64,000 nucleotides of DNA from Euprymna scolopes (Eukaryota), in NCBI GenBank assembly GCA_053919585.1, contig CM132787.1; one strand, written 5' to 3'. A program made the position numbers and the translations under genes. Under the pieces are notes generated by a model. The model saw only the letters and a program-made list of their open reading frames with translations, had not been told where the DNA came from and did no database searches. Below, piece by piece: positions 33,365-62,090 of this stretch. Position 1 is the first letter of the stretch, and every line of letters starts with the position of its first letter.

Positions 33365-33684
33365 TGCCAGCTTCTTTAAGAAACACGGTGCTTATCGTTG
33401 AGCACTTTCAGTTGAATTAAAGTCGGTCAGTTTAGCTCTTATGGCAGATCATCATATAATGGCTAGATTACTCTGACAGACGTAAAAAAGCATTTAAAAA
33501 TAAATGTTTAAAATGCAACAGCATTTCCCGCGGTTAACGGTAGCCAAATAAATTAGGTCATTACTGATGAGGCCAGGGATGGCGTCCGTCGCTGGTTTCG
33601 AATCTATGATGGCTCACTGATGGTTCCTATAAGGATGAAACTAGTGTCTGTAGGTATTTAATAATTATTATAGTAAATATATAT

Positions 33685-33738
<54 letters not shown>

Positions 33739-33790
33739 GTTCTTATTGTTGAGCACATTACGTTGCAATAAAATAAAAATCAGTTACTTA
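33365..33790 (+). mobile_element. B-box/hammerhead element (family H2), partial tandem
   Basis: GGTTTCGAATCT, then CTGATGG-TTCCTATAAGGAT-GAAAC-TAGT-GTC, then (TA)n; diverged direct repeat 33387-33434 / 33738-33786. Confidence 0.65.
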
Positions 33791-34059
33791 AGAAATCGTG
33801 CGCAGATTGTGATGTTAAAATCATTTGATCACTCTCGACATTCTTAAATGATATTTGCGCTTTATATGAATGTTGTTTAAATAGAGCAGAGATGTTATTT
33901 TCAACTATGTTATCGCCGCGATGCACGTTCCTAGCAAACAGAGCAGAGATGGTTTCATTGTCGCATTCAAATCTTCTGAGCGACGAGAATCGTAAATCTT
34001 TGCACTGATAAATCTAGAAATGATGAAATATTAGTGTATATAGCTGTTAACAATAATTA

Positions 34060-34328
34060 CCCATCTCCTCAGAGGATAAAATATTAGCAAATTATAATGG
34101 TTTATACCTAATTTTCTAAATACAATAAACATAGAAAAACAAAATTAAAAGTTTTTAAAGTTTTTAAAGCATTAAGCAAGGGGAATTATATGTTTGTTCG
34201 AAATGAAAAGGATATTGAAATTCAAAATGTGATAAACTTTTAATTTAGATTTTCTATGTTTATTGTATTTAGCAAATTAGGTATACACCTTTATAATTTG
34301 CTAATATTTTCTCCTCTGAGGAGATGGG
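34060..34328. mobile_element. MITE with ~95 bp TIRs and TA TSD
   Basis: TA|CCCATCTCCTCAGAGG ... CCTCTGAGGAGATGGG|TA. Confidence 0.9.
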
Positions 34329-34455
34329 TAGACATCGAACACCTACAGGTTAAGGAAATATACTAATTCAAATGTATTCTTTGTCATGCATTTATTAAAA
34401 ATTCTAGATTTGAAACTTAGCCATTTCAGGTCATAGAATTTAAATTACTAATTTA

Positions 34456-58662: not shown

Positions 58663-58727
58663 AGGTTGCGGCACAGGTGTGAGTTGAATTCAATTGCTTT
58701 ACTTTGAGGTATGTGCCTATCTTTCAC

Positions 58728-59150
58728 CTTCACCATTCCCGTGGCGGCTGCTGTTGGGGCGCTACAGATGACCTGTCAATCAGTCCTCTCCATCCTTCCT
58801 TGTTATCGCCACGTTTGACAGCTTCGTTCAGCTTCAAACCATTTCCATTCTCTGATGTTGTATCTCATTTTCTGTCTACCTTTCTTTCTTCTTCTTACTG
58901 GTCCCTTAAGCATTATCTTTGCAAGCCTCTCTCTTTTTGTTACCTAGCCGCACCATTTTTTTTGCCTCGTAATTGTAGTAAGATCTTCACAAGGACCAAT
59001 AGCTTGCCTTATTCTGTTGATGCCTTCCTCATTCCTTATGTGATCTTTGTAAGAGAGGCCAAGCAGTCTTCTGAAGGTTCTCATTTCAGAGGCCTCAACC
59101 TGATTTTCTAATCATGCTGTTAGAGTCAATGTTTTACAAGAATACATGAA
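58728..59150 (-). mobile_element. RTE LINE 3' fragment
   Basis: WCG*VTKRERLAKIMLKGPVRRRKKGRQKMRYNIREW. Confidence 0.8.
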
Positions 59151-61920
59151 CACTTAGGGGACAAGGGGATTTACAAGTGAAATTAGAAATCCATTAATTA
59201 TTGTGTATATCGTAAATATATTATTATGTTTTATCTTCATCGAGAGAAGTAATAATTATGTGAGTTTCTCTAGGCAAATGTCAGACACTATACGAAATAC
59301 ATTTACAACAGCACATCATAGGAATTCAGGTTGATCTAAACATGTCATGACGAAAGTACAAATAAAAGAACTCTTCTCTCAAAAGAAACGAAAAATACTG
59401 AATTATTTAAAAAAATATAAAGTCAGCATTGCAACGAGATTTCTTTGTTTTTTCTATTTACTATTTTCTATCATTTGGATCCCGTTTCGCGTGATGAGCC
59501 AAAGAATTTAAGAGAATTTAAGACAAAGATTTAAATTCTCTTATAATATAAGCGTTTTAGTTCTTCTTTTTTTTTTAAATTTTAGTTTTATAAAATTTCT
59601 ATTTTACCGAATCAAACACATTTGCGGAAACAATCTATTTGATGAGGGATATATTTTTGTCTCTAATGAGTTGTTTGGTGAGCTTCCACTATTCAACGAA
59701 CCACGTGTAATACATACCTCATAATATATGAATAAAATATTATTATGTAAGAATTAAATACATCGCTTATCTTTGGCATGTTAACTATATGCATAAATAC
59801 ATACATACATACATACAAATATATACATATATACATACACCCACACACACATATATACACACACACACACACACACATATATATGACAGATTTTCCTGGC
59901 GTGCCGCAACTCAGGAAGCGGCTACAATTGCTGAATTCGCACACAATGTAAAACCTGAGACAAACCGTGACATTAGAAAAGACAGAGCAGCCGCCGAATC
60001 TGATACGGAATTATCTCGAATGTCTCCAATACATCAAAGCTTGAATCAGTCTAACAAGCCATCTTCAAACCCACAAAAACATTGCATGATTATGGACGAA
60101 TATCATAATCATATATATCATTTGTCAAGATTACGGATGAAACTTTTCTTTAAAAAAAATATCGCCGAAAGAGTTCTCTAGTTACTTGTAAATGGTTGAC
60201 CGAAACATGCTCCTGAATGTGTAGCGCCATATTAATGCTTATATAAAACAAATAAAAAGCATATCTTGCTCTGTGTGTATTGAGCATGCTTGCATTAACC
60301 TCATTAAAATTTCATTGGTTTCTTTAGCTCTGNNNNNNNNNNNNNNNNNNNNNNNNNNNNNNNNNNNNNNNNNNNNNNNNNNNNNNNNNNNNNNNNNNNN
60401 NNNNNNNNNNNNNNNNNNNNNNNNNNNNNNNNNNNNNNNNNNNNNNNNNNNNNNNNNNNNTATTTGCAGTTTTTCCCTGTTTCATTTTCACGCATTATAC
60501 CAATTTGACTGCATAATCTTTCACCCGAATAACTTATCCAAAGCATTCCAGGGCAGTTCTTCAGTTTCTGATTCTTGTTCTTGTTACGATCTCTTCCAAG
60601 CTTAGTCTCTTTTTTATCTCAATTATTATGTAGTTCGTGTTTCTTCTTCCTCAAGAACCGCCTGCCCATCCTAGTTCCGAAGTTAGACAAGCTGGTCCTA
60701 AAAATAGCCAACCTTAGCATGGAATACACTCGGGTATTGAGAAAAAGCAATTTATCTAATAATTAGGTTCGCTTGCGCCTGCGAACGAGCATTCGTCGAC
60801 GCATACGTCGTCCATCAAATTCGATGGATGTGCGCTACAAGGATATTTTACTTTTTGATTTCATTTTTTTTTTTTTCAATATTTATGTCTGAAATTGCTT
60901 GTGTTCTAGATGAACAATAAAGAAGATCAATTCGTTTTGTATTTCGGTTGCAACTAAGTAGATTATTTTTTTATTACGTAACCTTGAATTAGACGAAAGC
61001 TCACACATTAACCGTATTTCACTAATAATATTTTTGTTTTGGTGAAAGACATCACGCTTTCTTATATAAATGGCGCCTTGCCCTTATTGTAATCACTCTT
61101 GCTAATCTATCTGTATTATCACAACAGCTGTTTACCTTTCCACCCACGCTGATACGGCTCTGGAACTCAAAGGGTTATGAGTTTATTTGGGATTCTAGTA
61201 TTCTCGACTCCTTTATAGTTTATGTATGAGTGGTCCTCTACCCATTGGACTTCCATCCTTCTAGACACTTCACGGCAATTTTATCTGGTAGTAACAGATT
61301 TTGTTTCTGTTGTTTTCTTTTTGTGAGACGAGAAAGAGATTACAAATCGAATTTCTTTCTTTCTAACTTTTCTTCATTCACTATCTATTAATGAGAGCAC
61401 ATAAAACTCAAACAATTATGTATAAATATGTTATAAACGTCATATAAGGTGATTGCTTATACATGTATGTCGACTTGGTAGTTTCTGTATTGGGGGGGGC
61501 GCCTTAGTATTTCCGTATCTATTGCAAATAGTTTATAAACTCTAATCCTATTTCAAAGTAACAATGCAGCCCCGTGGATTGGTTTCCGCAATCAAGGTGT
61601 GAGGTTGTGTTATGCAATCTGGATACTTGATTTTTCATATTTATGATAATTGAATTATTGATATTGCCAAGGTATTTATTTCATTTATTAAATTTCTACT
61701 GCATAACAGTTTCGCTCTCGTAAATTTTGGGACTTGCAGATTATTAATTTCCCCAATGCTTTTGTTAATTGCTGATAGCCTGGATGGTAAAAAAAATGAG
61801 TCAAGGGTTTCTTTGTGGCTAGTTTTTAATCAATTGTTTGGCTGGAATTATCACTCTATACACTGATGATTGCGGACACATTAAACCAGTGGGCTTGTAG
61901 AATTGTATGTACACGCAACC

Positions 61921-62088
61921 AATGCTCTTTGTGTAAACAAATCGAACTTAGGCGCTTGGGCAATGTTTAATGCTTAGTAGCAGCTAATAGAGCAACAGTG
62001 GGAAGCGCTGACTGTCAACTAGATGACTTGAGGATGGTCTAGCCGTATTAATGAGGTGTGATAGAACGAAACCACAATTGCTGATGAC

Positions 62089-62090
<2 letters not shown>
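61921..62090 (+). mobile_element. Decayed family H1 hammerhead element followed by (TA)n
   Basis: ATGCTCTTTGTGTAAACAAATCGAAC matches 35388-35415; GTCTAGCCGTATTAATGAGGTGTGATAGAACGAAAC..GATGACTA. Confidence 0.7.

What the first reader, a model, noticed from the sequence alone, without database searches (positions are those of the whole stretch)
33365..62090. A class of short B-box + hammerhead + (TA)n retroelements (SINE/retrozyme hybrids), several families
Seen: about nine short elements place a GTTCRAATC-like motif roughly 15-45 nt upstream of a type I hammerhead core, usually ending at a TA microsatellite. H1: 35250-35565, 42643-42733, 61921-62090 (B box decayed). H2: 33515-33680, 34540-34715, 55350-55480, 55700-55850. 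H3: 38050-38183. Stems differ between families while the core and a palindromic stem III (AGTACT, ACGT, CTAG) recur. Established: minimal type I HHRs with palindromic stem III occur in Penelope pLTRs and non-LTR retrozymes, and the schistosome SM-alpha repeat is a tRNA-related SINE with a hammerhead. Inference: this genome hosts a diversified Pol III-driven, ribozyme-processed, probably Penelope-mobilised class associated with (TA)n. I do not know of such a class being described for this lineage, but cannot verify novelty.
Basis: partly seen in the sequence, partly recalled or inferred. Interest (0 to 1): 0.85.

Follow-up and report, generated by a model that had tools for sequence, protein, structure and literature searches.

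The report
Hammerhead-ribozyme mini-retroelements with tRNA-like module
The window holds about ten mostly decayed copies of several very abundant, non-coding, roughly 300-bp repeats that end in a self-cleaving hammerhead ribozyme preceded by a tRNA-like promoter-type motif and sit in (TA)n microsatellites; they look like passengers of Penelope-like retrotransposons, a known kind of element with one unusual added module.

Summary
All nine listed elements are copies of repeat families found across this 5.9-Gb, probably cephalopod, genome. I call them H1, H2, H2b, H3 and H4; a relative, H5, turned up in fetched loci.

- **Ribozyme:** The family consensus sequences carry intact minimal type I hammerheads with a palindromic stem III. 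Stems co-vary between families while the core stays fixed. In the window only 42646-42695(-) is still intact.
- **Abundance:** The exact pattern of B-box core, 5-35 nt, then hammerhead core occurs 33,348 times in the genome, against 7 for the backwards control.
- **Architecture:** Copies have a fixed 3' end (hammerhead, 12-36 nt tail, then (TA)n) and variable 5' truncation. Upstream partial units, inverted partners and long tandem arrays are common. These are hallmarks of Penelope-like elements.
- **Possible helper:** A canonical RT plus GIY-YIG Penelope-like element in the same genome has the same 3' layout, but no shared sequence was shown.

"Penelope-mobilised" is therefore well supported but indirect. 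"Pol III-driven" is unproven. A and B boxes with tRNA spacing are statistically supported in H2 and H3. However, ARAGORN and the Rfam tRNA model see no tRNA, and the module lies inside the element rather than at its 5' end. RNA cleavage could not be tested.

The closest precedents are the schistosome Sm-alpha SINE and metazoan non-LTR retrozymes. The scan had already noted the same class elsewhere in this genome (18 notes).

The parts
33351..33679 (+). H2 copy, nearly full length (unit positions 21-323 plus tail 1-31). B-box-like GGTTTCGAATC lies at 33594-33604. The decayed hammerhead at about 33611-33655 has CTGATGG (A9 to G) and a 2-nt loss in stem III. (TA)n follows at 33680-33734.
   Evidence: family confirmed
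33740..34037 (+). Older, degenerate H2-like fragments (unit positions 60-150 at 69% identity; 286-322 at 81%) directly behind the (TA)n of the previous copy.
34573..34719 (-). H2b copy. The B box is GAGTTCGAATCTCC. The core CTGATGA...GAAAC is kept but stem III is lost. (TA)n flanks it at 34460-34525.
35270..35565 (+). H1 copy: an upstream partial unit (unit positions 246-283, a hammerhead with G8 to A) plus a full unit with an internal deletion (positions 190-223, the B-box hairpin). The 3' hammerhead is decayed. The tail GATGACTA is present. (TA)n lies on both sides.
37925..38195 (+). H3 copy, 5'-truncated (unit positions 74-307 plus tail 1-36). B-box-like GATTTCGAATC lies at 38100-38110 and CTGATGA at 38129-38135. 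G12 of GAAAC is lost. (TA)n follows from about 38186.
42646..42732 (-). Young (97% to consensus), strongly 5'-truncated H1 copy consisting only of the B-box hairpin, hammerhead and tail. The intact minimal type I hammerhead lies at 42646-42695. It is embedded in (TA)n on both sides.
55345..55475 (+). H4 copy, an old relative of H2 and H2b. Both the B box and the hammerhead core have decayed (CTGATAG).
55700..55850 (+). H4 copy with ATTCGAATCTC and CTGATGA but GAAAC changed to GAAC. It is followed by (CA)n(TA)n.
61922..62090 (+). Degenerate H1 copy with deletions. The hammerhead core has changed to TTAATGA. The tail GATGACTA is present and (TA)n follows.

Best explanation
The elements are decayed and, in one case, young copies of several high-copy families of non-coding retroelements about 280-345 bp long. 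They are of the 'non-LTR retrozyme / non-autonomous Penelope-like element' kind.

**Unit layout.** Each unit reads: AT-rich body, then a structured tRNA-like module with A-box and B-box motifs, then a minimal type I hammerhead with a palindromic stem III, then a 12-36 nt tail, then (TA)n.

**Shown here**
- The families exist and are very abundant.
- The consensus ribozymes are intact, and their stems co-vary between families.
- Copies have a fixed 3' end and variable 5' ends.
- Many copies are longer than one unit, or are tandem or inverted.
- Copies sit in (TA)n.

**Inferred life cycle**
1. Multimeric transcripts arise from tandem or partial-tandem copies. They may start at the tRNA-like Pol III-type promoter of the upstream partial unit, as in Cassandra/TRIMp3 LTRs.
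2. Two hammerheads pair through the palindromic stem III and cut the transcript to unit length.
3. The RT and GIY-YIG endonuclease of the genome's abundant Penelope-like elements nick (TA)n.
4. The RT primes on the UA-rich tail by microhomology and copies a multimeric or circularised template.
5. This leaves 5'-truncated, partly duplicated or inverted insertions.
For: **Families and copy numbers**
- First-look candidates are 5161 (H1), 1670 (H3), 1054 (H2), 2370 (H2b) and 222 (H4).
- There are 33,348 exact B-box plus hammerhead pattern hits, against 7 for the control.

**Ribozyme**
- The consensus cores are intact.
- Rfam Hammerhead_1 scores 25.8 and 25.6 bits (local E = 1.9e-4) on H3 and H2v copies, and Hammerhead_3 scores 23 bits on an H1 copy.
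- Across 12 sequences from 5 families, 93% of cells are paired and 12 of 15 pairs show changes on both sides. No shuffle out of 500 reaches this, and slid controls give 22-44%.
- Predicted dimers form an intermolecular stem III and stem I, and are 8-13 kcal/mol better than two monomers.

**Architecture**
- The 3' end is fixed and the 5' starts are variable.
- Upstream partial units appear in nearly all H1 copies and many H2 and H3 copies.
- Inverted head-to-head partial copies appear in 7 of 30 H3 loci.
- Tandem arrays of at least 19-20 units exist.
- (TA)n follows 43-77% of 3' ends, against 6-8% background.
- These features match published descriptions of Penelope-like elements (PMC8557442; PMC8969392).

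**Possible helper**
- A canonical element with an 806-aa ORF (RVT_1 plus GIY-YIG) occurs in tandem copies. Its 3' end is a hammerhead-like motif, a 34-nt tail and (TA)n.
- GIY-YIG gives 15,395 first-look candidates.

**tRNA-like module**
- H2 has A box TAGCCAAATGG and B box GGTTCGAATCT 54 nt apart; 0 of 2000 shuffles match both.
- H3 has TGGACGAGTGG plus TTTCGAATC; 4 of 2000 shuffles match.
- The B box and the variable-arm-like hairpin are kept across the diverged relatives H2, H2v, H2b and H4, with compensatory changes.

**Other support**
- Sense-strand T4+ runs number 2 against about 8.5 expected, while A4+ runs number 15.
- H5 words are held at 0.73-0.84 by small assemblies of the organism, including one run recorded as oligo-dT RNA.
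Against: - There is no RNA-level evidence of cleavage, circles or transcription start sites (one search failed).
- No autonomous element sharing sequence with the 3' end of H1-H5 was found. The one examined shares only the layout. No RT or EN fragments lie next to the copies in 290 kb of loci.
- No hammerhead reaches Rfam's gathering score. The main H2 consensus has a U.U mismatch at positions 10.1-11.1.
- The tRNA-like module is not recognised by ARAGORN or the Rfam tRNA model.
- The module's internal position means a promoter role works only from an upstream unit.
- In H3 and H5 a T4 run lies 15-23 nt after the cleavage site. It would terminate Pol III before the body unless read through.
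- Tandem arrays could also grow by DNA-level mechanisms.
Confidence: 0.8

Rival explanations
1. The tRNA-like A/B-box module is not a promoter but an RNA structure kept for another step. It might be recognised by the reverse transcriptase or tRNA-processing enzymes, or aid folding, stability or circularisation next to the cleavage site. Under this reading, transcription comes from Pol II or from read-through.
For: - The module lies inside the element, immediately 5' of the hammerhead.
- Its hairpins keep pairing through compensatory changes between H2 and H2v.
- Unit RNAs are more stable than shuffles, with z = -3.5, -1.7 and -3.1.
- 5' ends cluster just 3' of the module, as expected if a structure stops the RT.
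- Copies extend past the T4 run in H3 and H5.
- H5 words occur in an oligo-dT library.
Against: - The A-box and B-box consensus and their 43-54 nt spacing are exactly those of Pol III type 2 promoters.
- T-runs are depleted on the sense strand.
- Precedents exist: Sm-alpha and Cassandra/Helenus LTRs.
Confidence: 0.3
2. The elements are ordinary LINE-dependent tRNA-derived SINEs that merely happen to carry a hammerhead-like sequence.
For: - A-box and B-box motifs are present.
- Copy number is high and copies are 5'-truncated.
Against: - The head is not at the 5' end.
- There is no poly(A) or LINE-type tail.
- Partial tandem and inverted copies are Penelope hallmarks.
- The hammerhead is under selection, as shown by compensatory changes between families.
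Confidence: 0.05
3. The families are satellite DNA spread mainly by DNA-level processes such as unequal crossing-over, replication slippage in (TA)n or rolling-circle DNA, rather than by retrotransposition.
For: - Long near-identical tandem arrays exist: H5 with period 322 and at least 19 units, and H1 with period 285 and at least 20 units.
- The elements are associated with microsatellites.
Against: - Thousands of dispersed single copies lie on all large contigs, with one fixed 3' end and random 5' truncation.
- A very young 87-bp 3' fragment sits alone inside (TA)n at 42646-42732.
Confidence: 0.1

Closest known systems
Metazoan non-LTR retrozymes (Cervera & de la Pena 2020, PMC7229834; review PMC7761336; Li et al. 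2026 preprint 10.64898/2026.07.22.740005)
   Same: - Non-coding repeats of 150-400 bp carrying a type I hammerhead.
- Both tandem and dispersed copies.
- AT-rich and predicted to be structured.
- Proposed dependence on Penelope-like elements.
   Different: - The published families use classical type I hammerheads and are said to show no conserved motif besides the ribozyme.
- Here the ribozyme is the minimal, dimer-requiring Penelope type.
- Here it is preceded by a tRNA-like A/B-box module.
- Here copies end in (TA)n.
- Circular RNA was not tested.
Minimal hammerheads in pseudo-LTRs of Penelope-like elements (Cervera & de la Pena 2014, PMC4209133; Lunse et al. 2017, cited; Craig et al. 2021, PMC8557442)
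   Same: - A minimal type I hammerhead with a palindromic or absent stem III that can act as a dimer.
- Thousands of dispersed copies.
- Pseudo-LTRs, inverted copies and a 30-40 bp tail.
- Microsatellite insertion bias, including (TA)n.
   Different: - The elements here have no ORF.
- No sequence link to an autonomous element has been shown yet.
- A tRNA-like module is not described for pseudo-LTRs.
Sm-alpha / Sj-alpha SINE-like elements of schistosomes (Ferbeyre 1998 and Laha 2000, cited in PMC2770079)
   Same: - A tRNA-related, Pol III-type head together with a hammerhead.
- A short, non-coding repeat present in more than 10,000 copies.
   Different: - Sm-alpha is recognisably derived from tRNA-Gln and is found by tRNAscan-SE.
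- Sm-alpha has a canonical, monomer-active hammerhead.
- It occurs in a different phylum.
- Here the head is unrecognisable to tRNA finders and lies internally, next to a minimal hammerhead.
TRIMp3: Cassandra, Helenus and Ajax (Kojima 2024, PMC10886601)
   Same: - A non-autonomous retroelement whose terminal repeat carries a small-RNA-derived Pol III promoter.
- The upstream repeat can therefore drive transcription of the unit.
- Tandem arrays occur.
   Different: - Those are LTR elements with a primer-binding site and polypurine tract, mobilised by Copia or Gypsy elements.
- They have no ribozyme.
- Here the repeat is a Penelope-type partial tandem copy.

Membership tests
Hammerhead ribozyme, minimal type I (Penelope type) | Conserved core CUGANGA ... 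GAAA, with a cleavable H17 after an A15.1-U16.1 pair | tested here: met
   The H1, H2, H2v, H3, H5 and H6 consensus or natural copies meet it, as does window 42646-42695(-). The other window copies are mutated.
Hammerhead ribozyme, minimal type I (Penelope type) | Three helices supported by covariation | tested here: met
   93% of cells are paired and 12 of 15 pairs show changes on both sides. No shuffle out of 500 reaches this, and slid controls give 22-44%. Caveat: the rows were picked with a filter that required some pairing. The unselected family consensus sequences show the same stems.
Hammerhead ribozyme, minimal type I (Penelope type) | Palindromic stem III with no loop, allowing an active dimer | tested here: met
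   Stem III is ACAGUACUGU in H1, ACACUAGUGU in H2 and ACACGUGU in H3. Cofold predicts the double hammerhead, 8-13 kcal/mol better than two monomers.
Hammerhead ribozyme, minimal type I (Penelope type) | Reaches the Rfam gathering score | tested here: not met
   The best scores are 25.8 bits against 34 for Hammerhead_1 and 23 bits against 48.5 for Hammerhead_3. This is expected for minimal variants.
Hammerhead ribozyme, minimal type I (Penelope type) | Self-cleavage | not testable with these tools
   This needs in vitro transcription or raw RNA read ends. The only read-laying run failed.
Non-autonomous Penelope-like element / non-LTR retrozyme | Partial tandem (pseudo-LTR), inverted 5'-truncated partner and 5' truncation with a fixed 3' end | tested here: met
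   BLAST maps of 90 copies against their units show all three.
Non-autonomous Penelope-like element / non-LTR retrozyme | Insertion bias for microsatellites | tested here: met
   (TA)n of at least 4 units follows 22 of 29 H1, 23 of 30 H2 and 13 of 30 H3 3' ends, against 6-8% background. Microsatellites also flank the 5' ends.
Non-autonomous Penelope-like element / non-LTR retrozyme | 3' end shared with an autonomous element of the same genome | tested here: inconclusive
   The one element fetched (L091) has the same layout of hammerhead-like motif, 34-nt tail and (TA)n, but no sequence similarity.
Non-autonomous Penelope-like element / non-LTR retrozyme | Unit-length circular or linear RNA in vivo | not testable with these tools
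   Only contig-level presence of H5 words in RNA or probable RNA runs was seen.
tRNA-derived SINE (SINE2) | Head recognisable as a tRNA | tested here: not met
   ARAGORN finds none in the window, the consensus sequences or 90 loci. The Rfam tRNA model gives no hit at E up to 10 in five searches of about 200 nt each.
tRNA-derived SINE (SINE2) | A and B boxes 30-60 nt apart | tested here: met
   In H2 both boxes match at 8 of 9 specified positions, 54 nt apart (0 of 2000 shuffles). H3 matches at 8/9 and 6/9, 43 nt apart (4 of 2000 shuffles). H1 is weak. By eye, H5 has GGTTCGATCCT (8 of 9) and an A-box-like TAGTCAAGGGG (7 of 9) about 43 nt upstream; no shuffle test was run on H5.
tRNA-derived SINE (SINE2) | Head at the 5' end of the element | tested here: not met
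   The module occupies unit positions of about 200-280 of about 300, directly before the 3' hammerhead.
tRNA-derived SINE (SINE2) | Transcription by Pol III | not testable with these tools
   The evidence is only indirect: 2 sense-strand T4+ runs against about 8.5 expected, and 15 A4+ runs.

The most novel reading that the evidence does not exclude
These could be Pol III-promoted Penelope passengers, a Penelope-world counterpart of Cassandra/TRIMp3. In this reading the tRNA-like A/B-box module in the duplicated terminal part (the pseudo-LTR or upstream tandem unit) drives transcription of the unit. The dimeric hammerhead then trims the promoter leader. The template for reverse transcription is a multimeric or circular RNA, which would explain copies longer than one unit and the two alternative 3' ends of H3. 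If so, this would be the first case in which the source of transcription of an animal retrozyme can be read from its sequence. It would also be a tractable, very young system for asking what hammerheads do for Penelope-like elements.
Probability: 0.3. Interest if true: 0.7.

Novelty: new variant of a known kind. Interest (0 to 1): 0.5.

Why it matters
**Open questions this bears on**
- Decapod cephalopod genomes are reported to have almost no annotated SINEs and mostly unclassified repeats (PMC13218726).
- What hammerheads do for Penelope-like elements is unknown.
- How animal retrozymes are transcribed and mobilised is also unknown.

**What these families offer**
- Tens of thousands of copies, in several families.
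- Young tandem arrays.
- A readable promoter-like module.
- Insertion structures that point to multimeric or circular templates.

This makes them a good natural data set and source of constructs for testing the open questions. The basic kind of element is already known, so the gain is an extension and a test system rather than a new principle.

Tried and rejected
- **Rfam at gathering threshold on the window:** no hammerhead was found, only two 5S-like hits. The E-value scan of 33-62.5 kb was swamped by microsatellite 'miRNA' hits.
- **tRNA detection:** ARAGORN and the Rfam tRNA model were negative on heads and consensus sequences. I therefore do not file these as tRNA-derived.
- **Read laying:** No read-end or junction evidence was obtained.
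- **Real tRNA genes of this genome:** I did not try to get those letters another way.
- **My own reversed-B-box control pattern:** it is invalid because it matches an H1 variant (CCTAGCTTGAGG). I use the tool's built-in backwards control instead.
- **tblastn of the Penelope ORF against all loci and the window:** no hits.
- **Chance motifs:** rejected by the copy counts and the control.
- **LINE-dependent SINE:** rejected as the main reading, for the architectural reasons given under the rivals.

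
Full report
**Setting**

The window is G000:C5:6448001-6512000 of a 5.9-Gb assembly with about 46 chromosome-sized contigs. It is AT-rich and full of (TA)n. RNA runs that hold parts of it are labelled 'mollusc metagenome'. I infer a decapod cephalopod; this is a guess and not needed for the argument. 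The N runs inside the finding's span (43965-44113, 44789-44926, 48871-49007, 50829-51065, 60333-60460) do not touch any listed element, so continuity across them is irrelevant here.

**Are the motifs there?**

A strict scan (CTGANGA, paired stem II, GAAA) finds only three intact cores in the window. They are 42664-42687(-) and two in the separate palindrome at 56.2-56.5 kb. Rfam gives nothing at gathering level and only 22.4 bits for 42658-42703(-). The picture changes when the elements are treated as repeat copies.

**Families**

Each element recruits many relatives genome-wide. First-look candidate counts are:
- H1 (35245-35570): 5161.
- H3 (38040-38185): 1670.
- H2 (33500-33670): 1054.
- H2b (34540-34720, minus strand): 2370.
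- H4 (55690-55850): 222, old, 72-78% identity.

Alignments of 30 copies each give units of 283 (H1), 323 (H2) and 307 nt (H3), measured from cleavage site to cleavage site. These consensus sequences are of non-coding repeats. No consensus of any coding element was built.

Loci flanks added three more families or variants:
- H5, a relative of H1, in near-identical tandem arrays of period 322.
- H2v, with period 345.
- H6, a palindromic hammerhead element without a B box, also present in decayed form at window ~34040-34345.

H2, H2v, H2b and H4 are homologous to each other, and so are H1 and H5.

**The ribozyme**

- The consensus sequences have the full core and three helices.
- Rfam, run on short stretches, gives Hammerhead_1 at 25.8 bits (H3 copy) and 25.6 bits (H2v), both with local E = 1.9e-4. 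It gives Hammerhead_3 at 23 bits for H1. All are below gathering, as expected for minimal variants.
- Across 12 natural sequences of five families, 93% of cells pair and 12 of 15 pairs have compensatory double changes. No shuffle out of 500 reaches this, and slid controls give 22-44%. The rows were chosen with a pairing filter, but the unselected consensus sequences show the same stems.
- Stem III is a loopless palindrome: ACAGUACUGU, ACACUAGUGU or ACACGUGU.
- Cofolding predicts the double hammerhead, with intermolecular stems III and I, 8-13 kcal/mol better than two monomers.
- This is the known Penelope-type minimal hammerhead (PMC4209133; PMC7761336).
- About half of the sampled copies keep the core.

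**Copy architecture**

Mapping 90 copies onto their units shows the following.
- The 3' end is fixed, 12-36 nt after the cleavage site.
- 5' starts are spread along the unit.
- Many copies are longer than one unit, with an upstream 5'-truncated partial unit.
- Some are 2-4 unit tandems.
- Some have inverted head-to-head partial copies (7 of 30 H3 loci).
- Ten H3 copies use a second 3' end at unit position ~171, again followed by a microsatellite.
- (TA)n of at least 4 units follows the 3' end in 22 of 29, 23 of 30 and 13 of 30 copies, against 6-8% of random windows.
- Elements often sit in each other's (TA)n.

Genome-wide, the exact pattern of B-box core, 5-35 nt, hammerhead core gives 33,348 hits against 7 for the backwards control. 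These include arrays of at least 19 H5 units and, from the second pattern, at least 20 H1 units. Pseudo-LTR-like partial tandems, inverted truncated partners, a short tail and (TA)n bias are published hallmarks of Penelope-like elements (PMC8557442; PMC8969392).

**A candidate helper type**

GIY-YIG gives 15,395 first-look candidates. [quoted passage not shown] Its 3' end is a hammerhead-like motif (U at core position 3), a 34-nt tail, and then (TA)n. This is the same layout as H1-H5, but without sequence similarity. The real partner is therefore not identified. An earlier, unchecked note (s1-295599) reports a GIY-YIG remnant followed by a tRNA-type promoter and a hammerhead elsewhere in this genome.

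**The tRNA-like module**

Evidence for it:
- H2 has TAGCCAAATGG (8 of 9 specified A-box positions) and GGTTCGAATCT (8 of 9 B-box positions) 54 nt apart. No shuffle out of 2000 matches both.
- H3 has TGGACGAGTGG and TTTCGAATC 43 nt apart; 4 of 2000 shuffles match.
- H1 is weaker. Its relative H5 keeps a canonical GGTTCGATCC.
- Between the two boxes, H2 has a 5-7-5 hairpin and a 6-bp long-arm hairpin. The latter keeps pairing in H2v through double changes.

Evidence against a tRNA origin or SINE-type role:
- ARAGORN and the Rfam tRNA model find no tRNA in any head.
- The module lies ~170-200 nt inside full-length copies, right before the hammerhead, not at the 5' end.

A promoter role is therefore possible only from an upstream unit, as in Cassandra/TRIMp3 LTRs (PMC10886601).

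Indirect evidence on Pol III:
- In favour: only 2 sense-strand T4+ runs in five units against ~8.5 expected, and 15 A4+ runs.
- Awkward: both T4 runs lie 15-23 nt after the cleavage site (H3, H5), yet copies extend beyond them.

I put Pol III drive at about 0.35-0.4.

**Expression**

Words of the young H5 array are held at 0.73-0.84 by many small assemblies of the organism, including one run recorded as oligo-dT RNA. This shows presence in RNA libraries, nothing more. Cleavage, circles and start sites remain untested. Unit RNAs fold more stably than shuffles, with z = -3.5, -1.7 and -3.1.

**Comparison and novelty**

The kind is known. The precedents are:
- Minimal hammerheads of Penelope pseudo-LTRs and thousands of dispersed copies.
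- Metazoan non-LTR retrozymes and their proposed Penelope origin.
- The schistosome Sm-alpha SINE, which combines a tRNA-derived head with a hammerhead.

I found no paper that mentions a tRNA-like or Pol III module in animal retrozymes or Penelope pseudo-LTRs, nor any hammerhead element in cephalopods. A recent cuttlefish genome paper reports almost no SINEs. The library is not exhaustive; the Ceph-SINE paper, for example, is not held. I rate this a new variant of a known kind. The same class was already noted many times by this scan in other pieces of this genome (18 notes). One follow-up there (s1-244824) likewise called the Penelope-type part ordinary and the A/B-box spacer unexplained.

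**Verdict**

'Ribozyme-bearing, Penelope-type, (TA)n-associated families' has confidence 0.8. 'Pol III-driven SINE hybrid' is unproven.

Noticed in passing
window 23747-23863 (+) and 4760-4875 (-): Two 5S rRNA-like sequences sit just above Rfam's gathering score (41.7 and 38.4 bits) in otherwise repeat-like surroundings. They may be 5S-derived SINEs or pseudogenes. No hammerhead follows them.
   Followed up: partly
window ~34040-34345; intact relative at L048:2322-2374: This is a palindromic (head-to-head) hammerhead element, H6, with no B box. Its core is CUGAGGA, stem III is the 12-nt palindrome AACCUAUAGGUU and stem I has 6 bp. The window copy has GAAA changed to GAAC.
   Followed up: partly
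window 56197-56627: This palindrome carries two intact CTGAAGA...GAAA cores at 56246-56270(-) and 56447-56471(+). The stem III/I geometry does not fit a plain type I reading (A15.1 faces G). It is the subject of another note, s1-292383.
   Followed up: no
window ~35621-35700: A short mariner-type MITE with terminal inverted repeats CAGGGTGTTCCAAAAGTCTTGGGCAC... is inserted right behind the (TA)n of the H1 copy.
   Followed up: no
G000:C11:1.68-2.16 Mb: A very large cluster of high-scoring tRNA genes (64-80 bits, dozens within 0.5 Mb). The genome gives 506,012 first-look tRNA candidates.
   Followed up: no
L091 (G000:C5:35824000-35829500, minus strand): Tandem copies of a canonical EN+ Penelope-like element with an 806-aa ORF. 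Its 3' hammerhead-like motif has U instead of C at core position 3 and an extra A after A9. Whether it is active is unknown.
   Followed up: partly
H3 loci L032, L033, L035, L036, L040, L042, L049, L050, L053, L058: A second, alternative 3' end of H3 lies at unit position ~171 (...AAACAAATAACAT). It is followed by (TA)n, (TC)n, (TCTA)n or (CA)n, in copies longer than one unit.
   Followed up: partly
window ~61850-61900: An H4-like hammerhead fragment (CTATACACTGATGATTGCGGACAC...) lies just upstream of the degenerate H1 copy.
   Followed up: no
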